Position numbers and translations under genes: made by a program. The notes beneath the pieces were generated by a model that did no database searches, was not told where the DNA came from, and was given only the letters and a program-made list of their open reading frames with translations. Below are positions 1 through 60,378 of a DNA stretch of 64,000 nucleotides, piece by piece (within the stretch, counting starts at the first letter, position 1; each line of letters begins with the position of its first letter). Origin of the DNA: Perna viridis (Eukaryota); NCBI GenBank assembly GCA_037379345.1, contig CM074511.1, positions 29,456,862 to 29,520,861 on the forward strand, in the 5' to 3' direction.

Positions 1-439
1 AATATTGGTTGGGCAGATAGGGAAATTTATTTTTCAAAAACATTTTTACATTGAGTTAATGGAGAAACAATCTTGACTATAACAATGCTTGAGCCAAAAT
101 TGCCATAGAGTGTTGTGTGTAATTAATCGTAAATAAATTAAAATACCTATTCAAGTTAAGTTGTTGTTTTGAAAAATTTCTGCTTGATGTCAATATATAA
201 CAGTCAACTCTGTCTAGTAGGTGCATTTAACAAATTCAAATAATTGACTGTTTGTAATGATGTCAACCCCTTTCCAGGGAGATAGTGATACATTGTTCAT
301 CTCATGTTAATGTCGAGATTCTGAAGTTTCATGAGCAGTGGGTCAAAGCTACTTATATGTATTAATGTCTACTAAACAAATTTTTAATTTCTAGCTATGA
401 GCGATTCTGTTCTGATGTCTTTAATATTGTTGTCTTCAG

Positions 440-6400: not shown

Positions 6401-9400
6401 AGTAACAACTCAACAGATGACCATTGTAGAGAGTTTGTCACACAGAAAGGTCTACAGCCTCTCATGTCTATCCTAGGAATGCCCAACCTTTCCATTGATT
6501 TTCCTGCCTCTCAGGCATGTCATGCTGTATCTATTGTTTGTAAATCAATACTGGTAAGTAATAACTTGATTGAAGTGAAAAAGTCGAGTTGAATTGTTAT
6601 ATTCCCCTCACCTTGAAACATAAATGTTATCTATTATTTGGCCATTATATCTTCAAAATTTCTGTTGTCTGATAGGTGAAATATGATGTATTACGTTACA
6701 GCAAGTTGAAAATGACTAGTTCTGATTTCTATACAAATCTACATGTATGTAGGCTACTGTCATTTTTCTTAAAAGAACATACATATAGAATGAATTTCTT
6801 AGCATTACTCATTATACACTGATACCACTTGTTCCATTTTTGTCTAATGAAATGTTTTTAATTTTAGCAATTGTCACGGGAGCCTCAAGTACTAAAGCAA
6901 GGCTTATTGAAGTTAGATGAGGTATTGCAAAGTCTTGAAGCACTACACAAGCCACTAGAAGCCCCTGGAGGTTCTGTTCTTATCAGAGAACTTGCAAATG
7001 TTGCACATCTTCCTGATGCCATACAGTCTCCTCAGCTGACACCCCTGCTTCATGCCTTGTCGTCGTGCCATGCCTACATTATGATGTTTGTTCATGTGTG
7101 TAAAATGGGCCAGGTAAGTCATGAAATTTGTATCATGTATCTAAATCTTCAATTTTTGTACTTAATTGACTGTAAAACTTTTCAGAAAAATTTCTTTGTG
7201 TAATGATTGACAGCTTCTAACATGTTGCAGGAAGAAGTGAAAATTAATCCTTTTGCTAATGAGTTGTTGTTAGATCACCATTTTAAATATGTTACGTACA
7301 TATATCTCATATATTCTTTTGAATTATGGAGTCTTTTTCTGTTTGTATACATGTTTTTTTTTCTCTTTCAGTCTGATATAAGGTCAATATCAGTAAACCA
7401 TTGGGGATCTGAACTTGGACTGAAGGTGCTTAATGGACTTAGTAGACTGTATACTTCATTAGTCTGGGAGAGTACAGTACTATTAGCTCTTTGTAGTGAA
7501 GACATTTTACCACCTGGATGTGAATTTGGCAAGGCTGATATGGAGAAACTTCTTCCCAAAGACTTCAAACCAGAAAAAGATGGCAAAGAGGAAGATGGTG
7601 AAGGGAGTTCCTTGACAAGAGAAACAGGAGAAATGGGGAGTAATGGTGTCCGAGCAGCCATGGAGTCATTAACAACATCAGAAAGTATTGGATCACCAAT
7701 GGAAGTATCAGACAGTCAAACTTCTCAAACATCTGACAAAAAGAAGATATCTCCTACTCTTCAGGCACAAATTAAACAGCTAAAACCACTGTTATCAGTG
7801 TCATCAAGACTGTGTAGGACTTTAGCTGAATTATTTGGACTGCTGGTTAAGCTAAGTGTTGGAAGCCCAGTCAGGCAGAGAAGGACCAATACAACAGTCT
7901 CTCCTACCACACCAACCCCGGCTGCACAGGCAGTAGCTAGGGCTCTTACCAAATTGTTAACCAATGGTCTGAACTGGGAGCCTCCTCCTTGGTCTCCTGT
8001 GCCAAAACTTAGGTAATTGAATTCATCATTTCTAAGTTACAGTAATTTTGGAGTATATTTTGTTTTTCACAGATTTTTTCTTTTTCTTATAAAGTATAAA
8101 AAGACATATAAAGTTAAATTGCATGGCTAATTTCAATCTTCAGTTCTTGTTTAAGTGATGATTTGTATGTTTCTTTATGATGAATTTACCCTGACAAGCA
8201 TATATCTGAACATAATTGTTGATACTTATCTCTGAAAGAAACATGCATCTCCTAAATATGTTTTGAATGTAAAATACATTGATCATATATACACCAATTA
8301 TCTGTAGTGGTTTATAGTAAATGTTATGTTGTGTGTCGAGTAATGATCAGTGTTTTTCTGTTTTTCTCCATGAAAATGAGTAACGCTCAATAGAAATCAA
8401 ATTTTAAATTACTAATTATCTTTCCATTGGCTAAATTTCATTCGTCAAAGGTTATAAGAAAAAGTAATCCTGTAGTCCTGCTAACTTCAGACAAATTTAA
8501 TGTTTTCTTGCTTTTCAGATTAACATTCCTGGTTTGCTCAGTGGGTTTTACTTCACCAATGTTATTTGACGATAGAAAGCATCCATATCATCTGATGTTA
8601 CAAAAGTTTTTAGCCTGTGGAGGACAGAAAGCATTGTTTCAGTAAGTTGCTGTAATGAATAGAGTATTGCAAACATCAGCTTTTGCACAATACAAATTTT
8701 CTGAGTGAAGGTTTCAGTGGTGGAAGTTATGTGTCAATGCATGTTGATGAACAACCTGTAAAAATTGTGTTGTATTAATTATTTGTTAAAATGTGTATGA
8801 AAATCGAAGGCATGCTTCAAAGACATTGTAGTTAGTGTTGTTTCTTGATGATGATATAATCTTGACAAGCATATATCTGAAGAAATATGTTGAAATTTAA
8901 ATCTGAAGGAAACACAAGAAAAAAAAATGTTGATTTATGGGACATTCTCAGATTTTGTTTTGTGAGTAGAAATAAACCTTTCCCCCAATGTGTGGATGGT
9001 TAAAATTCAAAATGTTAATGTACATACATATAACAGGTACTGTAAAGCAGGTAATTTTCTTGGGGCTATTTGGTGTATTTTAGCTATCTGTATAAAACAC
9101 ACAAAAAAATTCCTCAAACTATTTACTCAGGGCTTAAGTACTAAGTACACCACTTGCCAAAATGAGAAATATAACATTCTGGATACCTTTTTGCTTAAAA
9201 ATTGCCAAATTTTACCTCTGCCATATGGCAACAACTGAACTGATCTTCTGATTTCAGGGCATTTGAGTGGGCATTGTCATGTGATGGCAAAAAGAAAGGA
9301 GATAACAATGAACTTCCAGGTAACTTCTTCCTGCATATTATATTCAAATCAGCAATTGAACATCTATATTGAACTTATTTGGGTTTTTTTAACAGCTTAA

Positions 9401-12400
9401 GTGATTGTTATACATGTAATTGAGACCTGGGCATAATTAATAAGTGAACATTTTAGGAATGACTTTGACAAATAAAACATAAAAGTTATGCACAAAAATT
9501 ATAATTCTCTTTCTGTGTTGTTTGATCTGTATAAACCAAATTTAAATTGTTTGTTGTTTAAAAATAGATGGAACTGGTGAATTCCTGGATGCCTGGTTAA
9601 TGCTCATTGAAAAGATGGTCAATCCAGAAACTGTAATGGAGTCTAGCCACACACTACCAGAGAAATCTAGTCAGCCAGGATTCGTCCCTTTTAACAAAGT
9701 GCAATATCTGATAAGTACTCAAAAGGTATGTAGAATCAATGTACACGTAAATTTACACTCTCTATGGAAAACTAATACTCTAGCTCAAAACAAATGAAAA
9801 CTGAACTATTTCCCAAGTTTGAAACTTTTTACTAAAACGCTGTGAACAGCCAGGTCTATTGGTTAAAGGCTACTAGGTTAGGATGTCTCCTTATATTGTA
9901 TGATTTTTTTTACATGTAGTTCTTAGAGGAAAAAAAATATCAAATGTAATAACAGTCCTTTCATGGAAATCTACACTATCAATGGGAAACTGTCACATTA
10001 GCTTGAAATGCAAGAAAACTGCGCACATTTCCCAAGTTGGAAACTGTTTGTACTATTCCCAATGAACAGCCTTGCTTATTGGTTGAAGCTAGAACTAATA
10101 ATAATGAGGTATGAAGAAGGTTGATAAATAGATAGTGCCATTGCATAGGTTGAGCTCATTATGGTTCCATTCAGCAAGTCCTCTTCCCATGATGAATCAC
10201 ATTATTGACAAGCATATGTCTAAATGTGTTATGTTAGACAACATTAAAATCTGAGGAAGCTTATGGAGGTTGCTTTGTCAAATCTGTTGCAAGGCTGAAG
10301 AGAAACCAAATTTCTGTAAATTTGTGAAATAACTTTCTGGAAAATAACGGATATAATTTATTACTTCTACATTACAGAAATATATGCATTTTTTTTACAT
10401 TTTTATCATTTTATCATGCAGGCTGCATTTAATGCTGTGATGGAGCTTTGGAATATGAAGCCTTTGAAGGTGTATGGTGGTAGAATGTCCGAGTCCATGT
10501 TGGCTATCCTCAGCCATATCATCAAGGGAGAAATAGTTATCAAGGTAAATGGTTTGGCAAACTCCCATACTTTATGGAGACTGCCTAATGAAAGAAAAAG
10601 ACTGAATGTGAAAGTAATTATTGTGTTGGAGAGAGTAGTCTTGCATTGTGTATCTTCATGTCTGTCATGTGACCTATGTGATTGAATACAGTGCTACAGT
10701 AACAGTAGTGATTGGCATCGTTGGATAGAGGTTTTGTTTAGTAACTTTTATCCTGGTTTTGTAGCTAGACATTATACTAAACATATTGATGGTGTAAATA
10801 ATGAAAAGTATTAATATTGTTTCATCTTTTAGCATTTCAGTGGAATTGGAAACTAAAATTCTTATGAAATTATGTGATGAATGAAGAAAAAGAATAGGCA
10901 TATTGACCTGTAGAATTTTTAATTGTTACATGGATGACTTTCTTGAAAGTCATACCACTTCTCCTATTTTTATATTTTGATAAAAAAAAATTCAATGCAT
11001 TTTGATCAAATGGAAAGCCAAAATCTTTCAATGTTATTATAGAAATATCTAGATAAAGAGAAGCCAGCTGTGGCTGCGGCTGCTGCTGCTACTACAGCTG
11101 CTGAATCTCAGAGTAGTACTGCTACCAGTGCAACACCTGGACCATCACAGCCAACAGAACAAGAACCACAAGTTCATCAGCTCTATTTACAGATGGTAAG
11201 CTTAATTTCAATAACTGAATTTTATTATCTTGTTTATATAGATTGGTTTTGGAGTCATCTGATCAAATTCTTAACCATATTATGCTTAATAACAACATCA
11301 CATTTTCACAAGATCACATGGAATAAATGAATTATCTCAGTGACAGTATGTTTTTGAAATTATTATTAAAATTTGTCGTTTTGAAATTCATTTTTGCTTT
11401 TCATTTGTTTCAAGTTGATTGGTATGGGATTTACGCCTGAACAAAGTACAGAAGCTTTGCTTCACTGTAATACTCTAGAACAGGCTACAGAATACATTGT
11501 CAACCACCCTCCTGCACCTCCTGCAGCCAATGGGGTAAGTTGATAACTATTCATAAATTTACTTATCAAAATGTTCCATGTTCTGATTTTATGATCTTGT
11601 ATCTGTTCAACTAACAACTTTTCATCAACATAGAGAATGAATTTTTCAGAAATTGCTTTCCCAGATTTTTTTTTCTATTTTGGGGTTTCAATCATCACAT
11701 TGAAGATGAGAGAGATGTTTTGATTTGAGGAAAAAAAATATGTTATTGACTTTTGAGTCCAGATATTCATGTAAATTGACCTTTAAATGGAAGAAAAAAG
11801 CTAATGTATGATAGATGGATTGCTTTCACTTTCGATATTAAACCTGAAATTTATTCAGTAATTAGTTTATATTGTTTTTTTTTCTTCATATGAATTGTTA
11901 ATACGAAGAAAGACAGGGTAACAAAAGAAGTCTATTTGATTTCAGCCTTTTAGCAGCGTCTTGGAGATGTCTGAGGAAGACCAAATGATGACTGCTATTG
12001 CCATGTCACTTGGACAGAATGCCGTCATGTCAACTGATGTAAGTACCTATAGATAAACCAAAGATGGAGTGGTTTTAAAAGTGACAAGAGATTTTAATGG
12101 TTGTATGACTGTTTTCAAACAAAATGCAAAATTTTACATTCAAGCACAAAGGGACTAATGCAGAATTGAAAGTGCCATTATACCTGATGTACTCTCCCTT
12201 TAATTTTTTTAATATCTCACTATGCAATCGATTTCTTTATTATCAGGGAAATCAGTCAGCACAAGGGACAGCTGCCACAAGCCAGGCAAAAACTGAGGAA
12301 AAAGAAAAAGATGAAATAGATGAGAAACAGGAAAATGAAGAACCATTAGATAAAGAGGCTTTAGATAACTTTACTAATTCTGTTGTCACTGGTATGTGTT

Positions 12401-15400
12401 TTAGTAAAGAGAACTAGTTGACTCTTGTATCATGAACTTCCATGATTTATTTACATTTAACATTGTTAAGTAATTTAAATTGTATTTTTTAGCAGGGATT
12501 GATGGTTGACTGTAGTAGAGCTTCTTATCAAAGATTTGAAAAAAAAAAACTTGCCTTGTCAGTGAAATAGTACAATTCTATGGTTGTGCACCTAAATAAA
12601 ATTTGTAGCCTATATATTTTATATCCATGAATGGGATGATGCATTGATGATCCTCTCTCTTGTAGGTTGTTTGACGCTTTTAGACTCACTGCCAGAAACA
12701 GTGTATAGGGTTTGTGATTTGTTCATAGTGGTCACACAGAGGAATGGTTCAAAATGGCAGAAAGATGTTTTGTGTACAATAGTTCAGGAGGTAATCTGTT
12801 ACCTTAAGATTGATGATAATCATTTTATTAATTGAATACTATTTTTATGAAGTGCTTGGACTGAATAAAAAAGACCCTTATGTGCTTTGCTCTAGGTGCA
12901 CGTTTCTTGAATCAGATCACATTTTCACCCTTCTTATGGATCTCACCGATTATTTATTCATACATATCAGTGGTAAATAGGTGTTGTTGTTTTTTTTTTA
13001 TTATGTAGAAAAATATTTGACTACTTTAACAACATGCACATGAAAAATAAGTTATTGGTTATTTAATTATGTACTGACTTCTAGGCTATATTTTTTAAGT
13101 AATAATTTTTGCCTAAGATAAACTCTGTATTTTTTTTTTAAGATAAAAGAATTATGTAAAGTGATAATATCAACGGCATCAAAAGAGGAGAGAACAAAGA
13201 ATATAGAAAATTCTTCTAGATTTGCTGCTAGACTTCATCTTTTTAGTTTACTATTTGAGGTATGTATTTTGATTGAATATCAATATTCGTAGTTATCATT
13301 AACATGTTTTGTTTTTTTTTCTAGGGAGATACAATTATTCTTTACCTTGTATTGTTTGGATCAAGTTGGCAATTATATTCCATATACTTTTGTTAATGAC
13401 ATTGAAATGTTGCACTGTGTATCTTCATGTCTGTCATATGACTTATGTGATCGAATACAGTGCTACAGTAACAGTAGTGATTGGCATCGTTGGGTAGAGG
13501 TTTTGTTTAGTAACTTTTATCCTGGTTTTGTAGCTAGACATTTAACAAATGTAAGATACTTTTTTGAGCTAGAATGATGTATTTGAAAGATAATTTTGGG
13601 ACAACTATGACCTGGATGAATTTTTCATTGTTATCTAATACAAGTATGTACTGAAAATCTACAAAGAACCTCTAGCATTTTTTGTTTTATTTGTAAATTT
13701 GTTATGATAAATAATCTGTTATTTTTTACAATACAGGAAGAATTTTTAGTCATTATGAATTTAATCAATGTAGAATAAGTAATTAAACTTCAGACTTGTT
13801 TATTATTCCTCTTTTTATAGGAAATGATGATGCCTTGTGCTGAAACCATTGACACTCTGTTTTTGACAGACACTTTGGTTCAAGTTCTCAATTGTGAACA
13901 AGAATTTATGTCTGCTAATCGGGACATGGTCACTTCCAGGTAGGCAGTATGGCAGAAATCAGAAGCAGGCATTCTTAGTTGTTAAGAAATAATTGTCTTA
14001 GAACTTTTGTGCACTTGTATTGGTAAAAATCCTGTGTCTAAGTTCAAGAAAATGTTAAAAGCAGTAAATGTATGCAGTTAGATTTGTGGAATTCGTACTT
14101 ACCTCATATTATGAATAATATCTTAAAGATCTGGATGAATCAAAACCTAAGTATTTCTATTAACAATATTGTTGAAAATAATATTTTGAGGAAATTTGGT
14201 GAAAAGTAAAGGTTGGCAGTGAAAAAATTTGGTTGTTTTGGTTAATTTGAAACACATTTTTTTTACATCTTATTATGAATTTTTTTTTCAGATGGCTTGC
14301 GCCTTTGCTTTTACTTCTTGACCTGTATGAAAAAGTATCTGTGATATCCAAGAGAAAAGCCCAAGCCATCAAAGTCACAGTAAGTAGAAATAAATGGCTT
14401 AAAGCTGTTGTTTCTATTAATTGCCATTAAGATATTATAGAAGTAGTTTATTTACCTCTGCTGCACTTTTTTTCAGCTGTTATGACATAATTCATATTCT
14501 GCTAGTAAGGAGTGCAAAATTAATAGCTGTTTATTCACTAGTAAGGGTTATTATCTCTTAGTAGGTTATTCCGCAGCTAACATATCTTTTCAGCTATTAA
14601 ATCTTTCTTTTCAAGAAATTAAGAATTTGGTGATGAGAACAATTTCTGTTCCTCTTGTACATGCATATGTCTGAGGTTAAACAAAGTATTTGTCTTGTCT
14701 TGACTAACTACTGAAACTGTCTAGGTGCTCAGTAGTATCTTGAATAAGTTGTTACCAAAAAAAAACATTGAAGCAATTTAAGCCCAAAGTCCTTCTACTA
14801 CTTATGTAAAATGAACAAGTATGGCAATGAAATAATATTTTATGGTGGTGTAGGCATGCTTTTAAACTGCTCTTATAAAAATCAGATGTACATACAGTTG
14901 GTTAGCCTACTTTTATGTGGTATCAAAATATTGATATGTAGCTGTCATAAGTGGAGCTATGAATGACTTCGAGGTTATGACCTTAATTGTTAGGAATAAT
15001 GGTCTAAATCATATTTCAGATTTCCACTCAAAAAACATGAGTAAAAGTGGTTCTCAATGAAATAGTATCACAAGGTTTCATTACCCAAAAGTTAGACTGG
15101 GATTGATTTTTAAGGTTATGACCCAAACCATTAAGCAGAAACAGAGTAAAAAGATTTTTCTTGTTTTCTTTACACCAAATCTTGACTTGACAGATCTGTA
15201 AGAAATAGTAACACAAGGTTCCATGTTATGAAAATGAAGGTTGACAGTGATGTTTAGGATTTTGACCTGAGGGGTTTTGGAATTGGGACAAAAAAGGAAT
15301 TTTTTTTTTTCAGATTTTCATACCATTATGCAGGTTAAAATGTATGGATGTGTATGAAATCATACTGCAATATTCCTTATAACAAAAGGAAGGTTGGATT

Positions 15401-18400
15401 GGTTTTTAAAAAAGATGTTATTGAACATTTGATTTAACTTTGTATTCAGAGCTGTATCAAGCTCAAATGTTATATCCTTGTCAGTGTTTGACCTCAAAAT
15501 CTGAGTCCTATCAAGTTGGACTCTGCTAAGCATTACACCTTAAGTTTTTTTTTTTACCTTAGTGGATTTCGGCTATTTCAAATCCAGATTTTACTGTTAC
15601 AATTCTTTTTTTTTATTGTATATTTACTTCCGATTTTGCCTATTTCTGCTTTTTTTGTTGACCCTGTAAATTCATCTCTGTTTGGAATAAATACTTCCTT
15701 AAAAATGGTGTGTAAATTCATCTCTGTTTGGAATAAATACTTCCTTAAAAATGATGTATTTTTGTGAAACAATAGACATATTTGAATAGTTTCCATTGTG
15801 GTTAGCTTCTTTGTAATGATTGAATATGTCTAGTACCAGGAAGTTGACTTGCCTTTATTTATACCCTCACTCAACAAGTGGGTGGTATATTGGAATCACC
15901 TTGTGTATCTAAATTTTTGTGGCAATTATCTTAACTCTCAGTGGATGGATTGATTAAAAATTGGATGTGTGGCTTCATATAGATAAAGCATATGTTGTTA
16001 GTGATTTTTATTGCTCTCCAATATCGACTTCCTGTACGAGTAGGGGTAATCCTAGCAAGACAATGCAAACTTCATGTTTCAGTGAGACAATAAATGCGCA
16101 CTCATTTTTCAACACAATTGTCAACTACAAACTGTGTTAGTACAGGGTGCTAGATTAAACGGTTGTTTATTCCTCAGTTAGAATTTCATTTCTTCCTGAC
16201 TTATTCCACATCCAACAGATTAGTTTTTACTACATGTACATGTTAATCTTTCTGAATTAAACTATTTTCTATTTATATACATGTGAAGAATCAGCTGTCA
16301 TATGATTCTATTATCCTGTCTCCTTGTTATAATTTTATGAAATCTTAAGTAAACATCATATAATGGAAAACCTTAAAATAAGCTGGGATTTAAATTTACC
16401 TTTATGAGTAGAAGTTTTTATCTTCATCAAGTTCAATATCCAGTGAAGAAAATCAGAAGGCTGCAAAAAGCGTCATTTAAAAAGGTTGAAAGTAGACGAC
16501 CCAGGTGTATGAGATTTCATAGGTCATAGGTCATTAATTGAGAGTCCCTGACCTTAGACTACCACTAATTTGAACCACTGTAAACTGTTATTTTTTTCCC
16601 ACAAACTAGAAATGTTAATAAAACCACTGATGTGTGTGATTATTATAGGTTTTAAAAAAAAAAAATGCTATAAAATCAACAAAACTTGCCTTGGACCTCA
16701 ATGTTAAATGTGTTATACAGAAGATATTTTCTTTGTTAGATGAGTGCAATTTTGATATCATTTACCTCTTTAATCTCCTTATTGATGACATGATTACAAT
16801 TTGACAGGCTAACAGTCACACATGGAAGTGGTTTGATGACAGTAATGGAAGATGGTGTAAATACAGTTTGAGTAATAACAAAACTATTGACGATGCCTAT
16901 CAGGCAGGAGATGTTAATGTACGATTCCAAGCTGGAAGGAGGCGATATACAGTCCACTTTAATTCCATGGTTCAGGTAATGTATTGAAATAGCTGAAATT
17001 CAAGTATACATGATGCATTCAATCTTGATTCTTCTGTTTGATAAATTTTACATTCATTGTATGTTATGATTTGAAAACCGTGCATTTGTGGACGATAAGT
17101 CCTATTTGAAAGTAAAATGCCACAAACACATGAAAAATATTTACTTATTTAATGAATACTGCTTCTTTACCCTTCATCAATGATGAATCTGAACAGACAA
17201 GCATATATCTGAACATTGCCTGTTGAATATCAGAATCTGAAGGACTTAACTACATTAAAATCTAATGATATACATAGAAATATCAAGATGAAGAAAACTC
17301 CAATGGATTTGATATTGATGAAGAACATTTGTATATGTTTCTGAGTACAATGTATTTTTGTTATAACAAAAATGAAATTACTGCTGTTGTTGATATAGAA
17401 ACAGTAACTTGAAACTTGAATACTTTTTTATATAGGTAAATGAAGAAACAGGGAACAGGAGACCAATTATGCTAAATTTACCTGCAATAGAAGAAAAACA
17501 ACAAGCTAAGGAAGATGAGAAATACGGAGTTAAAAAAGGTACTTTTTAAAGAGAAGCTTATTTTATCCCCCATTCCAATAAAGTTTGTTTGAGCTATACA
17601 TGTAAATGGATAATAACTTTATGAGTGTTATAAAGAAGGAACATTAATTGGAAAGAAGTGGGGATAATTCACCATCAAGTTTTTTTTTCTCAACCAACAA
17701 ATTATTTATTTTATGTGTCCTAGCTGGTTACATGCATTGTAGGTAATTAAATCATTGAAAAAATAAATATGTTATGATTCTTACAGAAGCAAAAATGGAA
17801 ACTGAACCCACAGAGAAGACCAAGGATGTACCACCATCATATCCTGGGTTAACACATGATCATGTTACTAATATTATCAGGTATAGTGGATTAGTACTTA
17901 TTTTTTTACACATATTTTGGCAGACTTATTATAGAATTCCTCTGCTCATTTTATGACATATCCTAAAATAACTCAATAACACTTTAGGGATTTGTCCTTG
18001 AAAGTAATGTCCATTTTGTCTTTCATTGGTTTTCAATTTGCCATACTTAGTCGTTCATTAACTAGTGTTTTGAGAAAATATATTATAAACATTATTAAAA
18101 CCATTAAGGGCAGTTGATCTTGTATTAAAATAGCAGTAGGCTAAATTATTAAGTTTTACTTAACATCAGGACGCTTATCCTACCGGTGCACCTGGTCCAT
18201 GCTCTCAGTTGAGTCCGAGTTGCTCATTTGCTTTTGTTACTTTGTATGTATGATTTTAGTTACTTCATGTTCTTTGTTGTGTAAATCTGTTTTCTATGTC
18301 TGGTCTTTGTCCCTGGATTATATTCTTTTGATTACCGCTATAATCTTGATTCTCTTGATTATTCTATGACATTCAAGTTAAATGATTAAGACAGATGCAC

Positions 18401-21400
18401 TAATATTCTATGACATTCAAGTTAAATGATTAAGAAGGATGCACTAAGTAACTTTCAAGATGAGAGTATCTGTTACTATGATGAATCTTAATTGACAAGC
18501 ATATGACAGAAACTTGCATGTTGATTCTGGATGTCTGAGTACATTTGCAATATATAGTTTTTAACAATTCAAAAGTGCAGTTTTTGAGAAACATGACATG
18601 GTAACATACTAAGTATGAGTTTTAGCATTCATAGAAAAAAATACATTGGGTCAGGAGCAAGAAATCTATTAAAATGCATTTTGGAATTAAATAAATGGGT
18701 TAGATGTACTTACCTGAACATATCAGACTTTATTTTCTTCCACTAAATATGTACTTCTGCTATTTCATATCTAGATATTACTGTTCTGTTTTGGTTCCAT
18801 AAAATCATGTCTGTCATATATAGTGATAGAACATTAGCATAGACAGATGGTGATGACTAATGTTATCTATCTTGTACATTTCAGATCTGTGGTTGTGTTA
18901 ATTGGTGTTCCAGTAGAGGCTGATTGTCTTCATGCTGCATTACGTTTAGTGTTAAGATTAACTCGTGAACATAAATATGCCACGTTATTCGCTGATCTTG
19001 GTGGACCTAAATTATTGTTGAACTTGACTCAATCTTCATATTTCCAAGGATTTATTTCTTTAGTGACGTTAATATTTAGACACGTTATGGAAGAAAAGGA
19101 TTCATTACGATATTGCATGGAAAAGGTAATAATTTTTCTTTTTCAACCAAAGCAAAACAATTCAATGTAAGTTTGTGCTTGTGTCCTTGCATTGTGTATC
19201 TTCATGTCTGTCATGTGACCTATGTGATCGAATACAATGCTACATTAACAGTAGTGATTGGCATCGTTGGGTAGAGGTTTTGTTCAGTAACTTTTATCCT
19301 GGTTTTGTAGCTAGACAGACCTTCAGCGTTAATTGTTTGTGCATTTTGTGTGTTCACCTTACAAATATACCTATTTATTTAATATCCTAGAATAAGACTA
19401 TTCCTAATTCCTGAATGAAATAAAATTGAGGAAATCCTTAGAAGTGCCAAGAATCATAGGCATAGAACATGAAAGTATGATTAGAACAAATTTGAATTTA
19501 AAAACTATTGCAGTCATTTATATATAAGAAAGACATTTTTTATGCTCCAGCTCTGCTGTTTGTATTTATATAAACATGTCCTGTGAATAAGTGTTGCAAA
19601 AATCTCTGCAATACTTAATGGGAAAAACATATGTAATGTTAAGTATGCAGCCTCATCTTGATGGTGTACTGTGTGCTGTTGTATATTGAAGACTTTTGAC
19701 TAAATAATACATCAACTTTAAGTTTGTTGACTTTTTGTTGCTCAAAGCTTGGCAACGTTTCATGAGATTGATTTGAAATTTAAAAAAAAAAAAAATTAAT
19801 GGGAGAACTTTCAGATTGTTATCGGGTTTCTAAATGATTGATGGTATTGTGTCTGAGACTTGGTTCGGTGCCACAACCACTTCCTGTTTGATGTCCCTTT
19901 TTATTTTTGGAATGACAGGGTGTCTGTGTCCCAAAACCCATTTCTTCTAATCTTTTTCTCTCTCAAAACCTTAAATAATTAATCCTGGTACAAAATGTAA
20001 CAGTATTATGAATGTTGATATTTGCAGGTTGTTAAAAAAGTTACAACTGGACACTGGGATGACCGAGGAGTCACTCAGCACAGTATGGGCAATAAAGAGC
20101 TTCATTATGTATTGAGACTGCTTGGTCCGGCAGCCTGTAGAAATCCTGAAATTTTTTCAGAAGTTGTCAAATCTATATTACGGATAGGATTACCTCCACC
20201 ATCAAAAAAAGGTACCTTAAATGTTGTGTGTCACCTCTTGATATTGTATAAGTCCTTGCAGTATTGGTTTATTTGTCAGAAAAAAATAGGGGTGTACTGA
20301 TACCCCAAGTACAGAAAATTCGAACAAAGTGTCAAGTTAAGTCTTGATTCATTGTCATGGGGCTCTTGTGAAGGAGTGAATGCCAAAGTGCCTTCAAGTC
20401 AACTTTAAAGTATGAGACATTCCAGAATCTGCTGTAATTGTAAGCACCTTTTTGACAAATTGAATAAGGTACTTTGTATTGAAACATACATTTTTGTATA
20501 TGTTGGCTTTTTTTTTTATTTTGAAGACTAAATAATACTGGATGTGTATTTTTTTATTTCAAAACTAAAAGTATCACGATGGAAATAAATATTGTAATGT
20601 GGAGACTTGCTTATACCTTTAACCTTTAGAATGTTTAGGAGTATTTTGGAGTATTTTCCAAATGAGTTCTATTAGAAAATTATAATGCATTGATATGCAA
20701 ATGGGACAGTGTTTCTAACTAATTGCTAATATGTTGATGCATTTATCAGTGATGAATCTTAATAGACAAGCATATATCTGACTTGTGCATGTGGAGACTG
20801 AGATTCTGAGGATTATGAGAATGTTATACACACAGAACAATTCAAAGTATGCCCGTATGGTCCACAGAAGCCTGGGCTAGATTAAAAATTTAAATTGTGA
20901 TTCAAAGCTTTGAAAGACATTTTGTATAATTACATTTCCTTACTGTTGTGAAGTATATTAGGGTTATTTCAGGAAAATGTATGGGAGGTTTGTACAGCAC
21001 ATTTTTTTTATACCCTACCACCCATAGAATTAAAATTAAATGTTCATAACAAAGTATTACTATGTATGCCTAGAAATACCCCATCCATACAATTTTTTAA
21101 AGATGCAGTCCACCCCCTCCCTTTCCTGTACATTTTTTCCTGGAATAATCCTTATTTTATTTCATCAATGAATGAGGTATGATATGTGTTGTCTTTCCCC
21201 ATTTGATTTTACTTCAATTTCGCTTTACACTCATTTTCTGATGTCTTTTGATGCTGATTTTATCATGTGACTCTGTGAAATGTAACAGCTGAAAACAGTT
21301 GCACTTAACACATGTTTATATCATTAAATGATTGATGTGCATGTGTTTTCTTGTAGATGAGGATGAAATCCGGTTTTATGGTCCAAGTTATCCTCAGCTT

Positions 21401-57400: not shown

Positions 57401-60378
57401 TGAACTGAGTTCTCAAAACATGGAGAATTTCTGATTGTTGTTTCAGTAACAACTCAGATCAGACACTATGTAATATAAAATCACCCTGAACCATGGTCAT
57501 GTAGTTGCTCTATCAACATGTCACACTGATTTGGGTGAAACAGACTGCTGTTCTACCAGTTTGTACAGACTTCTGACAGAAATATTTGGAGGGCTTAAAA
57601 TCAAAATTTTACCTTTTTTTTCTTAGATATACTGACATGGAGAGTGAGGATTACTCTTTTTACCAGGGTCTGGTATTCTTACTGGAGAACAATGTTCAGG
57701 ACCTTGGATATGAACTGACATTTAGTACTGAGGTAGGTCACAAAGTTGTTACTAGTGTGATAATAATAGGATAATTAATTGGAAAGAGTGAATATCCAAA
57801 TTATAATCACGAGTGTTAAAAAATTTAACGAGTGTGCCTAACTTGTTCTGTGCACAAGATAAATCTTAATTCATTCTTGGCACGAGTGATTATATTTTGG
57901 TTATTCACGATGACCAACTGATTATTTTATTTAATATATATATTTTTTCCTTTTTTCAATGTAAATTACTATATGAATTCAGACATCAAATCTTGTTTTT
58001 GACAGCTGTAGATTTATTTTAAAATATGTTGTTTATATTTTTGTTGTTAATGTTATATAGACGTTAAAAAACATGCGTTGCTAAGTTTGACTTGTGCTTG
58101 TGTGTCATATACATATAAAGATGCATTTAGCAATGTTTCAGTGCTATATTTAATGTATTATTTAAACTATGAATGAAAACATTTCATTAAGGAATGTCCT
58201 AAATATTGACTTTAGCTGAACCTTAACTACAACAAGCCATATCTGTTTTTTTTATTTTTTCTATGAGATATGTAATAATAATAGGATAATTAATTGGAGA
58301 GTGAATAACCAAAATATGATCACGTGTGGCAAAGAACACCTAGATTTAACAAGTTTGTGTAACTTGTTCCACGCACGAGTGATCATATTTTGGTTATTCA
58401 CAATAACCAATTGATTATCCTATTTATTTTATAGATTTCCTCCATTATTCATTGCTATTTTCTATATGAATTTTATATTTTGTAAAAGGTGGATTGATAT
58501 TTGTGTTGTGAAGTTTTGGCCGGAGAAAGTGCAACAGTAAAATTACCAATTTATTACAGTGAATTATCGATTTATTTATTTTTTTTTTTTTGGATTCATT
58601 TTTTTAACATTCAGTAAATCACTGATATCTGTATGATAACAGAAGTTACCAGATATGTGGACATTGAAAGAGTGAGATCTTGAAACATCAAAATGTGTGT
58701 TGCACATGATTTTTTTATCAGCTCACAAATAAAACTATTTTAAACAACCCTATTCAAATATTAGTATCAATATATATGAACAAATTAAATCAGCTGAAAT
58801 CTATCACATTCTTAGCATTTATTACAAACAAGCATTAAAAACTTCGTGCATTTTAGATTCAAGAATTTGGTGTGACAGATACAAGAGATCTGAAAACCAA
58901 TGGGAGAAATATACCAGTGACTGAAGAGAACAAGAAAGAGTATGTCAAACTTGTATGTCAGGAGAAAATGACAGGAGCCATCAGGAAACAACTTGGGGCA
59001 TTCATGGAAGGGTTTTATGACATTATACCAAAGAGACTAATATCTATATTTACTGAACAGGAGTTGGAATTATTAATATCAGGGTTACCAACGATTGATA
59101 TTGATGACTTGAAGGCTAATTCTGAATATCACAAATACCAGCCTACTTCATTACAGGTAAGAATTAGTCATGTTCCTTTAAGTTTACTCTTAAATGTCAC
59201 ACATTTTTATACCCCCTTCCCCTTTTTAAAATGGGGAAGTATATAGTGGTGATGGTTTCCCTTAATTTGTCTGTTCATACATTTTTATTTGTTTTCTCAG
59301 CAGTTATTTGTTATAATCTCTTGATATTTTGTCAGGTACTTTATATACATGTATGCATGCCATAATACTATAACTCGAAAACCCTTGCAGTAATGTTAAT
59401 AAACTTTGAATACATAACAGAGGTTTCATTAACTTTTTGCAATGCAGTTACCTTCTGTTTTGTAGGAGATTCTTTTGATCATTTTCTTTTATAAATATGT
59501 ACGAAGTTTTCAAATTTCAGGAGGTACCTTTCAGTAGCTTAGGAGGGTAAAAGTACCTGGTACCACCTCTTAATGAAAGGCCTGCATTGTTGTTCTCAAA
59601 TCTGTAAAGCAATGATGTTGATTTATATTCTAGGTGCAATGGTTCTGGAGAGCTCTAAGATCATTTGATCAAGCTGACAGAGCACAGTTCTTACAATTTG
59701 TAACTGGTACCTCTAAAGTTCCACTTCAAGGATTTGCCTATCTAGAGGGTATGAATGGATACCAGAAATTCCAAATACACAGAGATGACAGGTCTACTGA
59801 TCGTCTACCTGTTGCTCACACATGGTATGTCTTTGCTGGTTCAGATAAGATCTGTAATTAAGAGACTTGTGTGAAGATACTATATTATACAGATGTGATT
59901 TTCCTCAGCTTTTTTGCCTGAGAAATATAAAACCAAAATGTGCTGGATTTTATATGAGGAGCTTCAAAAAGTTTTTGCCAGACTAACTCCCCCTGTTCCA
60001 GGTTTTTTCTAAGTTGACCAAAATCATGTCTAATTATAATGGATTTTACTATTGTGAAAGGTGTAATTGGATTTTAAAAAAAAAGCCAGCATTATGGATT
60101 TATCATCGTTACAGAAGAAAAGTTTTTCATTTGTTTAATATATGATTTAAAAAAAAAAAGTAAATGGGAATGGAAAGACAATTCTTGGTTAATTTTTTTT
60201 TTTAAGTAATTAAATTAGAAATATGTGTAACTATATCAAGTGAACTTGAAACACTTTTTCAATTTCTCGTTTCAGTTTCAATCAACTAGATTTACCAGCT
60301 TATGAGACTTATGACAAGCTGAGGAAGATGTTACTTTTAGCAATTAATGAATGTTCAGAAGGATTTGGACTGGCTTAA
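440..60378 (+). CDS. HUWE1: E3 ubiquitin-protein ligase HUWE1 (5'-partial, 65 coding exons in window)
   Basis: GT-AG exons join in frame: 440-520,1173-1258,1464-1565,2286-2481,2747-2848,3133-3213,3470-3576,3870-4047,4648-4739,5147-5355,5795-5855,6377-6553,6868-7113,7372-8012,8519-8641,9258-9319,9568-9725,10422-10544,11043-11195,11415-11534,11946-12038,12247-12391,12666-12790,13143-13259,13821-13939,14292-14379,16808-16975,17436-17538,17787-17880,18885-19125,20028-20211,21357-21515,22302-22411,22685-22888,23613-24168,24882-25018,25316-25418,29780-29926,30483-30616,33280-33391,33830-33934,34378-34573,35087-35255,39965-40091,40370-40563,40935-41127,41399-41603,42256-42398,42764-42857,44275-44513,45061-45263,47173-47449,47850-49012,49893-50050,50903-51019,51606-51823,52923-53150,53815-53997,54681-54881,56240-56515,56830-57100,57627-57732,58857-59156,59634-59824,60276-60378. 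Diagnostic peptides: [43 protein letters not shown] repeats, and HECT ending AHTCFNQLDLP...SEGFGLA*. Confidence 0.97.
4785..4850 (+). pseudogene. Possible decayed SNORD27 copy
   Basis: GGCAAGCATATGA guide remnant and downstream TGTTGA, but no intact C or D box. Confidence 0.3.
7372..8012 (+). CDS. HUWE1: HUWE1 exon, armadillo-like N-terminal region ([13 protein letters not shown]...[14 protein letters not shown])
   Basis: ttcag acceptor and ag|gtaatt donor; lies within ORF 7207-8016. Confidence 0.93.
8171..8240 (+). ncRNA. SNORD27: Box C/D snoRNA SNORD27/U27-like, copy 1 (18S Am27)
   Basis: Box C ATGATGA 8177; guide GACAAGCATAT complementary to 18S AUAUGCUUGUC upstream of D' CTGA; C' TGTTGA; D CTGA 8232; terminal stem ttctt/aagaa. 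Confidence 0.92.
8839..8913 (+). ncRNA. SNORD27: Box C/D snoRNA SNORD27-like, copy 2
   Basis: ATGATGA 8848, GACAAGCATATATCTGA, TGTTGA, CTGA 8903, stem gtttctt/aggaaac. Confidence 0.9.
10183..10259 (+). ncRNA. SNORD27: Box C/D snoRNA SNORD27-like, copy 3
   Basis: ATGATGA 10189, GACAAGCATATG with variant D' CTAA, D CTGA 10251, stem cttcc/ggaag. Confidence 0.87.
10642..10774 (+). ncRNA. SNORA8: H/ACA snoRNA SNORA8-like, copy 1 (18S Psi1056, Psi1081)
   Basis: Hairpin gcattgt/acagtgc, H box ACAGTA, second hairpin, ACA at 10769. Pockets GTATCT/TYG pair 18S CGA-UC-AGAUAC; GGCATCGTT/TGGT pair ACCA-UA-AACGAUGCC. Shares GGCATCGTTGG...CCTGGT with vertebrate SNORA8 as I recall it. Confidence 0.88.
11415..11534 (+). 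CDS. HUWE1: HUWE1 exon, UBA domain (LIGMGF...[14 protein letters not shown])
   Basis: MGF loop and EQATEY motif; splice sites in frame. Confidence 0.9.
11946..12038 (+). CDS. HUWE1: HUWE1 exon, UIM ([16 protein letters not shown])
   Basis: Matches UIM consensus EE..L/M..AI..SL. Confidence 0.88.
13411..13543 (+). ncRNA. SNORA8: H/ACA snoRNA SNORA8-like, copy 2
   Basis: Near-identical to 10642-10774; ACA at 13538. Confidence 0.88.
14462..14585 (+). ncRNA. Single-copy H/ACA snoRNA, predicted 18S Psi866 guide (3' hairpin)
   Basis: Hairpin tgcact/agtgca, H box AAATTA, hairpin tagctg/cagcta, ACA at 14580. 3' pocket TTTATTC/TTATTCC pairs 18S GGAAUAA-UG-GAAUAGG, 14 nt from ACA. 5' pocket TTTTTC/AGTAA pairs UUACU-UU-GAAAAA. 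Confidence 0.8.
14625..14718 (+). ncRNA. Candidate divergent SNORD27-like C/D RNA or decaying copy
   Basis: GTGATGA 14630; ACATGCATATGT-CTGA, versus ACAAGCATATGT in intact copies; CTGA 14711; weak terminal stem. Confidence 0.35.
15665..15753. repeat. Tandem duplication, ~46 bp x2
   Basis: tgtaaattcatctctgtttggaataaatacttccttaaaaatg twice. Confidence 0.85.
16808..16975 (+). CDS. HUWE1: HUWE1 exon, WWE domain ([15 protein letters not shown]...[14 protein letters not shown])
   Basis: WWE signature; continues as [12 protein letters not shown] in exon 17436-17538. Confidence 0.93.
17171..17243 (+). ncRNA. SNORD27: Box C/D snoRNA SNORD27-like, copy 4
   Basis: ATGATGA 17180, AGACAAGCATATATCTGA, TGTTGA, CTGA 17237. 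Confidence 0.9.
18167..18362. repeat. Interspersed repeat with a related copy at ~61940-62140
   Basis: Shared blocks cctggtc.atg, ttcatgttctttgttgtgt, ctgttttct, tatattcttttgatt, aatcttg.t..cttgatt. Confidence 0.6.
18360..18447. repeat. Tandem duplication, ~44 bp x2
   Basis: tattctatgacattcaagttaaatgattaag..gatgcactaa twice. Confidence 0.85.
18474..18541 (+). ncRNA. SNORD27: Box C/D snoRNA SNORD27-like, copy 5
   Basis: ATGATGA 18478, GACAAGCATATGA with D' CAGA, TGTTGA, CTGA 18535, short stem tac/gta. Confidence 0.88.
19188..19320 (+). ncRNA. SNORA8: H/ACA snoRNA SNORA8-like, copy 3
   Basis: Near-identical to the other copies; ACA at 19315. Confidence 0.88.
20744..20813 (+). ncRNA. SNORD27: Box C/D snoRNA SNORD27-like, copy 6
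   Basis: GTGATGA 20749, AGACAAGCATATATCTGA, C' TGTGGA, CTGA 20806. Confidence 0.87.
20959..21154. mobile_element. MITE
   Basis: TIRs tagggttatttcaggaaaatgtat / gtacattttttcctggaataatcctta. Confidence 0.7.
21619..21690 (+). ncRNA. SNORD27: Box C/D snoRNA SNORD27-like, copy 7
   Basis: GTGATGA 21625, AGACAAGCATATATCTGA, TGTTGA, CTGA 21684, stem gtttc/gagac. Confidence 0.9.
23149..23279 (+). ncRNA. H/ACA snoRNA family C, copy 1 (5' pocket for 18S Psi1692, SNORA70-like target)
   Basis: Stem agcattctt/aagaatgct, H box ACATTA, ACA at 23274; three related intronic copies. Confidence 0.82.
23613..24168 (+). CDS. HUWE1: HUWE1 exon ([14 protein letters not shown]...[14 protein letters not shown])
   Basis: Conserved HUWE1 peptide within ORF 23559-24203, with splice sites. 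Confidence 0.93.
24465..24592 (+). ncRNA. H/ACA snoRNA family C, copy 2
   Basis: Pocket TGTGTA/AAGGG pairs 18S CCCUU-UG-UACACA, 14 nt from H box AAATAA; ACA at 24587. Confidence 0.85.
25872..29716. mobile_element. Non-autonomous hAT-like element (hAT5-type), 3.8 kb
   Basis: Imperfect TIRs CAGGGTTTGAAA / TTTCGATCCCTG; 5-bp direct repeat AGTGT at 25867-25871 and 29717-29721; no long ORF. Confidence 0.65.
30483..30616 (+). CDS. HUWE1: HUWE1 exon, Asp/Glu-rich acidic tract
   Basis: GAT/GAA-rich low-complexity exon, in phase with neighbouring exons. Confidence 0.85.
32382..32468. repeat. Tandem duplication, ~43 bp x2
   Basis: ttaaagtcattgttagcttt...gctttactgatccatctgat twice. Confidence 0.85.
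35900..36467. mobile_element. hAT-like MITE
   Basis: TIRs CATAGGTGTCAGCT / AGCTGACACCTCTG; degenerate 8-bp flanks gtgttgta/ttgttgca. Confidence 0.55.
36960..37170. repeat. Interspersed repeat resembling a mussel-type SINE/MITE
   Basis: ccaaggctccgtgttgaag...tggatggagagttgtc motifs recalled from Mytilus repeats; contains a ~38-bp tandem duplication. Confidence 0.45.
42945..43073 (+). ncRNA. H/ACA snoRNA family C, copy 3 (diverged 3' hairpin)
   Basis: Same 5' hairpin with TGTGTA/AAGGGC pocket; H box ACAACA; ACA at 43068. Confidence 0.8.
43086..44197 (+). mobile_element. hAT-like DNA transposon deletion derivative with a TTF-type zinc-finger remnant
   Basis: TIRs CAGTGATTTAGCTAG / CTGGCTAAATCCCTG; TSD TGGTCAT at 43079-43085 and 44198-44204; ORF 43384-43752 FKPEW..FP......MYC..C...F..G......I.KH....DH (ZNF862/hAT N-terminal zinc finger). 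Confidence 0.85.
45061..45263 (+). CDS. HUWE1: HUWE1 exon, UBM repeats ([21 protein letters not shown]; [16 protein letters not shown])
   Basis: UBM/DUF4414 motifs; third UBM is in exon 47173-47449. Confidence 0.93.
45918..46052 (+). ncRNA. H/ACA snoRNA family D, copy 1 (target uncertain, possibly 28S)
   Basis: Hairpin atggag/ctccat, H box ACAGAA at 45980, second hairpin tgtgta..gtgc/gcac..tgtaca, ACA at 46047; paralog at 46922. Confidence 0.72.
46922..47054 (+). ncRNA. H/ACA snoRNA family D, copy 2
   Basis: Hairpin aggaga/tctcct, H box ACAGAA, conserved ACAGACAGACCTGTGCTTT...GGCACTGTGTTTCGCAA, ACA at 47049. Confidence 0.75.
47850..49012 (+). CDS. HUWE1: HUWE1 largest exon ([39 protein letters not shown])
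   Basis: ORF 47828-49030; conserved HUWE1 peptides. Confidence 0.95.
51991..52834. mobile_element. Non-autonomous hAT-like element (hAT6-type)
   Basis: TIRs CAGGGTTTTCATTTT / AAAATGAAAACCATG; 6-bp TSD TATAGC at 51985-51990 and 52835-52840. Confidence 0.8.
52257..52522. mobile_element. MITE nested inside the 51991-52834 element
   Basis: Imperfect ~35-bp TIRs aggc..cacattaaagaatattttcgtttgctctaa / ttagtgcaaacaaacatattttaaattgtggcct; internal gggtaggtag motifs. Confidence 0.6.
53454..53584 (+). ncRNA. H/ACA snoRNA family E, copy 1 (SNORA15-like; 18S Psi1367 + Psi109)
   Basis: acatag/ctatgt hairpin with pocket GAATT/TCAGACA pairing 18S UGUCUGG-UU-AAUUC; H box ATATGA; tcaccc/gggtga hairpin with pocket GAACCAT/CTGATTT pairing AAAUCAG-UU-AUGGUUC; ACA at 53579. 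Confidence 0.88.
54047..54268. mobile_element. Short hAT-like MITE
   Basis: TIRs CAGGGTTTGACACTTA / TTAGTGTGGATCCCTG; near-TSD cttca/cttta. Confidence 0.6.
54943..55734. mobile_element. Tc1/mariner-type MITE
   Basis: Perfect 19-bp TIR CAGTGAAACTTCTCCAAAC; TA on the left flank (right flank is TC); subterminal ccggttt repeats. Confidence 0.85.
55840..55967 (+). ncRNA. H/ACA snoRNA family E, copy 2
   Basis: Near-identical to copy 1; H box ATATAA; ACA at 55962. Confidence 0.88.
56240..60378 (+). CDS. HUWE1: HUWE1 HECT domain exons (6 exons)
   Basis: [45 protein letters not shown] (Cys codon split tg|t at 59824/60276), TAA ending at 60378. Confidence 0.97.
57418..57545 (+). ncRNA. H/ACA snoRNA family E, copy 3
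   Basis: Near-identical to copies 1 and 2; ACA at 57540. Confidence 0.88.
57763..57933. repeat. Palindromic MITE-like element, copy 1
   Basis: Long inverted arms (ataggataattaattgg..gtgaata..caaa..atcac / gtgat..ttttggttattcac..ccaa.tgatta). Confidence 0.7.
58274..58428. repeat. Palindromic MITE-like element, copy 2
   Basis: Same arms as 57763-57933, in the same intron. Confidence 0.7.

What the first reader, a model, noticed from the sequence alone, without database searches (positions are those of the whole stretch)
8171..57545. HUWE1 is a major snoRNA host: about 19 intronic snoRNAs in 6 families
Seen: sense-strand elements with C/D or H/ACA boxes, mostly one per intron, in the order D27,D27,D27,A8,A8,F,D27,D27,A8,D27,D27,C,C,C,D,D,E,E,E. 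Five of the six families have pockets complementary to 18S rRNA. Established: human SNORD27 is hosted by SNHG1/UHG and SNORA8 by TAF1D, and human HUWE1 hosts let-7f-2/miR-98; HUWE1/Tom1 degrades unassembled ribosomal proteins. Inference: a lineage-specific arrangement co-produces the ribosomal-protein quality-control ligase and small-subunit rRNA modification guides from one pre-mRNA, with families spreading by local duplication into neighbouring introns.
Basis: partly seen in the sequence, partly recalled or inferred. Interest (0 to 1): 0.88.

Follow-up and report, generated by a model that had tools for sequence, protein, structure and literature searches.

The report
Mussel HUWE1 introns host many snoRNAs
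The introns of a mussel's HUWE1 ubiquitin-ligase gene carry at least 24 small nucleolar RNA genes, nearly all predicted to guide chemical modification of 18S ribosomal RNA; related species share the arrangement, so it is a real but fairly ordinary example of snoRNAs settling in a new host gene.

Summary

I found five more:
- a seventh family, G (5956-6078);
- a second F copy, F2 (16098-16220);
- three further A8 copies in HUWE1 introns just upstream of the window.

Seven copies are SNORD27-like (Rfam 33.6-51.5 bits; cut-off 52). Each keeps 11-13 perfect pairs that place 18S A28 (human Am27) at the methylation position. Family E is SNORA15-like. Families A8, F, C, E and G have pseudouridylation pockets that fit 18S sites. 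By my offset mapping, all but one pocket corresponds to a human site (Psi109, 210, 866, 1081, 1367, 1692). Family D has no convincing target.

Apart from one E copy in a CCT5 intron, the families occur nowhere else in the 723-Mb genome. Flanking sequence is unrelated between copies. Spliced RNA contigs confirm six exons and four one-per-intron placements.

Three other assemblies, from unidentified species (probably molluscs), carry D27, A8, F and C copies in HUWE1 introns. Copy numbers differ, and some intron positions do too.

Not shown: accumulation of the small RNAs, the name "SNORA8", or any functional link to HUWE1's ribosomal-protein quality control. This scan had already noted similar intronic snoRNA clusters elsewhere in this genome.

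The parts
439..60378 (+). HUWE1 orthologue, residues ~372 to the C-terminus; the 5' exons lie upstream of the window
5956..6078 (+).
   Evidence: (ceN42 27.2 bits, E 0.007)
8168..8243 (+). SNORD27-like C/D snoRNA, copy 1; 8-bp terminal stem
   Evidence: 47.2 bits
8839..8914 (+). SNORD27-like, copy 2
   Evidence: 40.2 bits
10183..10259 (+). SNORD27-like, copy 3 (D' box CTAA)
   Evidence: 51.5 bits
10642..10774 (+). A8-family H/ACA, copy 1; its 3' pocket fits 18S U1037
13411..13543 (+). A8-family H/ACA, copy 2
14462..14585 (+). Family F H/ACA; pockets fit 18S U761 and U821
16098..16220 (+).
17171..17244 (+). SNORD27-like, copy 4
   Evidence: 33.6 bits
18473..18542 (+). SNORD27-like, copy 5 (D' box CAGA)
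   Evidence: 35.1 bits
18881..19123 (+). HUWE1 exon confirmed by spliced RNA contigs
   Evidence: GT..AG joints in three runs
19188..19320 (+). A8-family H/ACA, copy 3; alone in intron 19124-20025
20026..20209 (+). HUWE1 exon confirmed by spliced RNA contigs
20744..20809 (+). SNORD27-like, copy 6; alone in intron 20210-21354
   Evidence: 36.5 bits
21355..21513 (+). HUWE1 exon confirmed by spliced RNA contigs
21620..21691 (+). SNORD27-like, copy 7; alone in intron 21514-22299
   Evidence: 50.1 bits
22300..22411 (+). HUWE1 exon confirmed by spliced RNA contigs
22685..22886 (+). HUWE1 exon confirmed by spliced RNA contigs
23149..23279 (+). Family C H/ACA, copy 1; alone in intron 22887-23610; its 5' pocket is degraded
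23611..24168 (+). HUWE1 exon confirmed by spliced RNA contigs
24465..24592 (+). Family C H/ACA, copy 2
42945..43073 (+). Family C H/ACA, copy 3; 5' pocket with 12 Watson-Crick pairs to 18S U1643
45942..46052 (+). Family D H/ACA-like, copy 1; no convincing target
46944..47054 (+). Family D H/ACA-like, copy 2; lies with copy 1 between exons that abut in the protein match
53454..53584 (+). Family E (SNORA15-like), copy 1; pockets fit 18S U1323 and U110
   Evidence: 33.3 bits
55840..55967 (+). Family E (SNORA15-like), copy 2
   Evidence: 37.3 bits; the 5' pocket matches the family consensus
57418..57545 (+). Family E (SNORA15-like), copy 3
   Evidence: 36.3 bits

Best explanation
The window holds most of the HUWE1 gene of a mussel. 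Its introns carry at least 24 snoRNA genes, 21 of them in the window, all on the sense strand.

The families are:
- seven box C/D SNORD27 homologues;
- 17 box H/ACA RNAs in six families: A8 x6, F x2, C x3, D x2, E x3, G x1.

Inferred mechanism. The snoRNAs are transcribed as part of the HUWE1 pre-mRNA. They are released by splicing and debranching, then trimmed by exonucleases to the ends protected by snoRNP proteins. They then guide one 2'-O-methylation (18S A28) and pseudouridylation at about seven 18S sites (U110, U211/212, U761, U821, U1037, U1323, U1643).

How the cluster probably arose. Families moved into a long, broadly expressed, intron-rich gene. They then multiplied within it and were homogenised or repeatedly re-expanded. 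HUWE1 most likely serves as a convenient transcription unit, not as a functional partner.

Shown here: sequence anatomy, copy distribution, host identity, splicing of the host, conservation and covariation.

Inferred: processing from introns, snoRNP assembly, and the modifications themselves.
For: - Host identity.
- SNORD27: near-threshold full-length Rfam hits for all seven copies. Each has 11-13 perfect pairs that put 18S A28 five nucleotides upstream of D'. In the genome-wide model search the seven copies are the best hits, and the weaker hits elsewhere lack the guide or a D box.
- SNORA15-like E: the 5' pocket aligns to the family consensus. Human SNORA15 guides 18S-1367 (PMC6466398).
- All H/ACA candidates fold as hairpin-hinge-hairpin-tail, with an ANANNA box and an ACA box.
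- F, F2 and the L018 F: 10 of 31 pairs keep pairing through changes on both sides, while the pocket strands stay constant.
- C: the 5' hairpin and pocket are almost invariant across three species, while the 3' hairpin varies.
- Similarity between copies ends at the mature boundaries and the flanks are unrelated.
- The families are confined to HUWE1. By contrast, a repeat in the same introns has more than 1400 genomic candidates on both strands.
- Spliced contigs from three studies define six exons and place four elements each alone in an intron.
- HUWE1 introns of three other assemblies hold D27, A8, F and C copies.
Against: - No Rfam family reaches its gathering score.
- No small-RNA data exist here. 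The public runs are contigs, which cannot show 70-135-nt products.
- Guide-target scores alone are not significant in this AT-rich DNA. A generic scan gave 333 hits on the + strand against 209 on the - strand, with antisense scores up to 15.5-16.
- Family D has no convincing target, and its 5' hairpin is too short for a normal pocket.
- G is a single copy with no orthologue checked.
- The C/D copies lie 160-600 nt from the next exon. That is far from the roughly 70-nt distance reported as optimal in vertebrates (my own knowledge).
- The mapping of mussel rRNA positions to human sites rests on offsets and on my recollection of the human and yeast sequences.
Confidence: 0.8

Rival explanations
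1. One reading: the arrangement is a selected regulatory unit. It would couple production of the ligase that removes unassembled ribosomal proteins to production of small-subunit rRNA modification guides.
For: Every structurally consistent predicted target lies in 18S, although 28S is twice as long. The host link persists in at least three other assemblies. The role of HUWE1/Tom1 in degrading excess ribosomal proteins is established knowledge that I did not test here.
Against: - No expression or functional data exist.
- Which family sits in which intron differs between species, and copy numbers change freely. That fits neutral birth and death better than a tuned unit.
- The same genome has other multi-copy intronic snoRNA clusters in unrelated hosts, CHD7 and FAM199X (earlier scan notes).
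- One E copy sits in CCT5.
- In vertebrates, snoRNA-host abundance correlations are only modest (PMC13736004).
Confidence: 0.1
2. The elements are independently transcribed snoRNA genes that merely nest in HUWE1 introns, each with its own promoter, as some nematode and plant snoRNAs have.
For: - The C/D copies lie far from the 3' splice sites.
- D_1 and D_2 share one intron.
- One related species has about 11 tandem C units in one intron.
Against: - All 24 elements are on the sense strand.
- The 60 nt upstream of the copies share no motif.
- Four of four checked elements sit alone in an intron.
Confidence: 0.08
3. The elements are non-functional repeats: retroposed snoRNA pseudogenes or transposon fragments.
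For: High copy number. Two copies are followed by A-rich runs. C_1 has a degraded pocket.
Against: - Boxes, guides and stems are kept, with compensatory changes.
- There are no target-site duplications and no dispersal through the genome.
- The elements are conserved in other species.
- A true interspersed repeat in the same introns behaves quite differently.
Confidence: 0.02

Closest known systems
Human SNHG1/UHG and Drosophila Uhg1, multi-snoRNA host genes that carry SNORD27 (U27)
   Same: They carry several intron-encoded snoRNAs, one of which is the 18S-Am27 guide (SNORD27 to 18S-A27, host SNHG1: PMC6466398). The mussel copies match SNORD27 full length and keep the guide.
   Different: Those hosts are non-coding 5'TOP genes with one copy per family (my own knowledge). 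Here the host is a large protein-coding gene of about 4100-4400 residues, and SNORD27 is present seven times.
Human SNORA15 in CCT6A
   Same: Family E has the same 5' pocket and the same target, the 18S Psi1367 equivalent.
   Different: The host differs: three copies sit in HUWE1 and one in CCT5, not CCT6A. The 3' pocket fits the Psi109 equivalent, which SNORA42/80 guide in human. Scores are below the Rfam cut-off.
Drosophila-type intronic snoRNA clusters of paralogous isoforms in consecutive introns, and the CHD7/kismet and FAM199X clusters noted earlier in this genome
   Same: Paralogous copies multiply within the introns of one host gene, sometimes several to an intron (for this genome; the Drosophila cases are from my own knowledge).
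   Different: The host gene is new. This cluster mixes seven families and is the largest seen here, and all its predicted targets lie in the small subunit.
Human HUWE1 as host of let-7f-2/miR-98
   Same: The orthologous gene is used as a host for small non-coding RNAs.
   Different: The RNA class and the processing pathway differ. No let-7 or miR-98 match appeared in the window at E <= 10.

Membership tests
SNORD27 (RF00086), box C/D | C box RUGAUGA near the 5' end, D box CUGA near the 3' end, and a terminal stem | tested here: met
   All seven copies have (A/G)TGATGA and CTGA. Terminal stems are 8 bp in copies 1-2, 5 bp in copy 3 and shorter in the others.
SNORD27 (RF00086), box C/D | A guide upstream of D' that places 18S A27 at the fifth paired position | tested here: met
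   11-13 perfect pairs to the species' own 18S, with A28 at position 5 (a 1-nt offset from human), in 7 of 7 copies and in three orthologous copies.
SNORD27 (RF00086), box C/D | Rfam gathering score of 52 bits | tested here: not met
   The best scores are 51.5 and 50.1 bits; the others are 33.6-47.2. This is a near miss for a model built mainly on vertebrate sequences.
SNORA15 (RF00398), box H/ACA | Hairpin-hinge-hairpin-tail with an H box ANANNA and an ACA three nucleotides from the end | tested here: met
   The true 3' end was not measured.
SNORA15 (RF00398), box H/ACA | A 5' pocket that fits the 18S Psi1367 site | tested here: met
   7+5 pairs to U1323 at 14 nt from the H box. The pocket strands align to the family consensus.
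SNORA15 (RF00398), box H/ACA | Rfam gathering score of 47 bits | tested here: not met
   33.3-37.3 bits.
   No SNORA8 hit on any A8 copy at E <= 10. The best hit is SNORA22 at 24.4 bits. The only weak SNORA8 hit (24.8 bits) falls on the unrelated element G.
Intron-encoded snoRNAs processed from a host pre-mRNA | Sense orientation inside the introns of an expressed, spliced gene | tested here: met
   24 of 24 are sense. Four placements are confirmed by GT..AG joints in RNA contigs from three studies. The rest rest on exon homology.
Intron-encoded snoRNAs processed from a host pre-mRNA | Stable mature RNAs of snoRNA size whose production depends on the host transcript | not testable with these tools
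   Only contigs of public runs were available, and they cannot show ends or levels of small RNAs.
Retroposed snoRNA copies or interspersed repeats | Poly(A) tail, target-site duplications, and genome-wide dispersal on both strands | tested here: not met
   Compare the true repeat.

The most novel reading that the evidence does not exclude
In a molluscan lineage HUWE1 has become a dedicated, long-lived host for guides that modify only the small-subunit rRNA. Selection would then keep 40S rRNA modification capacity and ribosomal-protein quality control on one transcription unit, while the guide copies are homogenised by gene conversion inside the gene.
Probability: 0.1. Interest if true: 0.7.

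Novelty: new member of a known kind. Interest (0 to 1): 0.45.

Why it matters
The report adds about two dozen unannotated snoRNA genes to a mollusc genome, in seven families. Standard Rfam-based annotation misses every one of them.

It documents a host switch. SNORD27 and a SNORA15-like guide sit in a gene that hosts microRNAs in humans.

It also gives a compact natural system for studying how snoRNA families multiply and stay alike within one gene. The small-subunit-only target set is an unusual pattern that can be tested directly by mapping modifications on mussel 18S rRNA.

It does not change how snoRNAs are thought to work.

Tried and rejected
- Rfam at gathering thresholds gave nothing. 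Rfam names for the H/ACA families other than E are unreliable: SNORA46, SNORA22, SNORA35 and ceN42, all far below their cut-offs.
- The genome-wide SNORA15 model search found nothing, not even the window copies, so it is uninformative.
- The weak SNORD27 model hits elsewhere in the genome lack the guide or a D box. Several are copies of one repeat.
- A generic H/ACA guide scan of both strands was too noisy to find new genes or to give significance.
- I tested whether the extra E copy marks an ancient SNORA15-CCT6A linkage. Its host is CCT5, so I rejected the idea.
- Family D: the best shared target, allowing mismatches, is 28S U799. I judged that unconvincing.
- Look-ups of full-length HUWE1 proteins, of a Dreissena fragment and of one large ENA contig returned no DNA. 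One protein search returned only vertebrates, human included, and I did not use those records.
- Reads: only contigs were available. Run X1 covers introns but not exons, and its kind is unknown.
- I could not identify the species behind the ENA and NCBI assemblies.
- I searched the spliced gene exon by exon, by reference. I built no joined coding sequence and searched with none.

Full report
**Host gene**

The window is AT-rich animal DNA, about 32% G+C. Exon-sized open frames on the + strand match solved human HUWE1:
- window 7207-8016 to residues 905-1127 (E 2e-68);
- window 23559-24203 to residues 2104-2277 (E 8e-55);
- window 58872-59246 to the HECT domain (E 1e-46).

Pfam finds UBM and HECT. 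tblastn of a full-length HUWE1 maps residues 372-4166 to window 439-60375 in order. The first about 370 residues map to the 6 kb just upstream.

Earlier notes of this scan call the genome a mussel. I searched the gene exon by exon, by reference. I made no joined coding sequence and searched with none.

**The observation**

No Rfam family reaches its gathering score.

In E-value mode all seven 'D27' elements match SNORD27 over the full model, at 33.6-51.5 bits against a cut-off of 52. The three 'E' elements match SNORA15 at 33-37 bits against 47.

I found five more elements:
- G at 5956-6078. It has the H/ACA architecture and a weak ceN42 match.
- F2 at 16098-16220. It keeps both F pockets on wholly different stems.
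- Three further A8 copies, plus a 44-nt tandem fragment, in the 5' introns upstream of the window.

The tally for the gene is D27 x7, A8 x6, F x2, C x3, D x2, E x3 and G x1. That makes 24, all on the sense strand.

**Anatomy and predicted targets**

I took 18S and 28S rRNA from this genome.

Every D27 copy has a C box, a D' box, a C'-like box, a D box and a terminal stem. Each has 11-13 perfect pairs that put 18S A28 five nucleotides upstream of D'. This is the human Am27 site, shifted by a one-base insertion (SNORD27 to 18S-A27: PMC6466398).

The H/ACA elements fold as hairpin-hinge-hairpin-tail with ANANNA and ACA boxes. Their structurally consistent pockets fit these 18S sites:

| Family and pocket | 18S site | Pairs | Calls |
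|---|---|---|---|
| A8, 3' | U1037 | 11+5 | 28, 54 |
| E, 5' | U1323 | 7+5 | 28, 54 |
| E, 3' | U110 | about 7+8 | by eye from 53, 54 |
| F and F2, 5' | U761 | 7+6 in F | 54, 84 |
| F and F2, 3' | U821 | 7+8 | 54, 84 |
| C, 5' | U1643 | 12 Watson-Crick in copy 3 | 54 |
| G, 5' | U211/212 | 13 Watson-Crick | 28, 54 |

For the E 3' pocket, the automatic scan paired the same right arm with other left arms.

By constant offsets, these correspond to human Psi1081, 1367, 109, 866, 1692 and 210; I also used my recollection of the human and yeast sequences. All six are documented human sites. U761 has no counterpart that I know of. Family D has no convincing target.

**A caution on guide scores**

Guide scores alone are weak evidence here. 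A generic scan gave hundreds of comparable hits on both strands. The target calls therefore rest on four things:
- complete snoRNA architecture;
- conservation between copies and between species;
- covariation in the stems;
- coincidence with known modification sites.

**Evidence of selection**

Similarity between copies stops at the predicted mature ends, and the flanks are unrelated.

In F, F2 and the orthologous F, 10 of 31 pairs are kept through changes on both sides, while the pocket strands do not change. The 5' hairpin of C is almost invariant across three species, while its 3' hairpin varies.

Except for one E copy at 78-80% identity, the families occur nowhere else in the 723-Mb genome. 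That copy sits, sense, in an intron of a CCT5 orthologue. Human SNORA15 is hosted by CCT6A, a different subunit.

A 79-nt motif in the same introns has more than 1400 genomic candidates on both strands. That is what a real interspersed repeat looks like.

**Expression**

Contigs from three public studies hold spliced HUWE1 mRNA with GT..AG joints. They define exons 18881-19123, 20026-20209, 21355-21513, 22300-22411, 22685-22886 and 23611-24168. This puts A8_3, D27_6, D27_7 and C_1 each alone in an intron.

Contigs cannot show small RNAs, so accumulation of the snoRNAs is untested.

D_1 and D_2 lie between exons that abut in the protein match, so they probably share one intron.

**Other species**

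Exon-level relatives led to orthologous loci.

| Locus | Exon identity to the mussel | snoRNA content |
|---|---|---|
| L018 | 88% | one D27 in the orthologous intron, two A8, one F, seven C (one partial) |
| L021 | 73% | about 11 tandem C units in one intron |
| L022 and L023 (two NCBI assemblies) | 72% | two SNORD27-like copies (48.6 and 42.8 bits) in HUWE1 introns |
| L024 | 68% | none in about 20 kb |
| L025 (a Priapulus scaffold) | 57% over 42% of the exon query | none in about 18 kb |

I could not name the species behind L018, L021, L022, L023 or L024.

Which family occupies which intron differs between species. Copies within a species are more alike than orthologues are. A8 copies are 89-97% identical within the mussel but 72-78% identical to L018, whose two copies are 99% alike. 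The closest mussel A8 pairs lie more than 20 kb apart. This fits gene conversion or repeated re-expansion, not simple spread to the next intron.

**Interpretation**

This is a genuine, previously unannotated snoRNA cluster in a new host gene, shared by a group of related, probably molluscan, species.

Intron-encoded clusters of paralogous snoRNAs are a known arrangement. This scan has already noted others in this same genome. I found no paper linking HUWE1 with snoRNAs in the searched literature.

The small-subunit-only target set is the most unusual feature. The proposed coupling to ribosomal-protein quality control remains speculation.

Noticed in passing
L009:5001-5133 (G000:C7:16869169-16869302): A fourth E (SNORA15-like) copy lies sense in an intron of a CCT5 (TCP-1 epsilon) orthologue. 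Human SNORA15 is hosted by CCT6A, a different subunit of the same chaperonin.
   Followed up: yes
window 57867-57979, 58360-58472, 30388-30439: A roughly 50-80-nt motif is repeated in HUWE1 introns. It is a genome-wide interspersed repeat (more than 1400 candidates, both strands), not a small RNA gene.
   Followed up: yes
L006:6219-6262: A 57-nt tandem duplication copies 13 nt of flank plus the first 44 nt of an A8 snoRNA, directly upstream of the full copy at L006:6277-6410.
   Followed up: partly
L021:17987-20529: A related species holds about 11 head-to-tail C-family H/ACA units (period about 215 nt) in one HUWE1 intron. This is a polycistronic intronic array.
   Followed up: partly
window 43384-43752 (+): An ORF inside the intron that also holds C_3 matches the Pfam zf-C17orf113 zinc finger (E 2.4e-8). 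It may be a transposon-derived or nested gene fragment.
   Followed up: no
window 18461-24460, run X1: One public run of unknown kind holds contigs over the introns, including D27_6, D27_7 and C_1, but none over the exons. It could be nascent or total RNA, or an effect of filtering.
   Followed up: no
L021, many places (e.g. 12545-12635, 8330-8415, 15470-15552): Hairpins match unrelated microRNA models equally well on both strands. They are most likely inverted-repeat transposons, not microRNA genes.
   Followed up: no
window 15665-15756, 18360-18447, 32382-32467: Three short two-copy tandem duplications (46, 44 and 43 nt; 95-98% identical) lie in introns.
   Followed up: no
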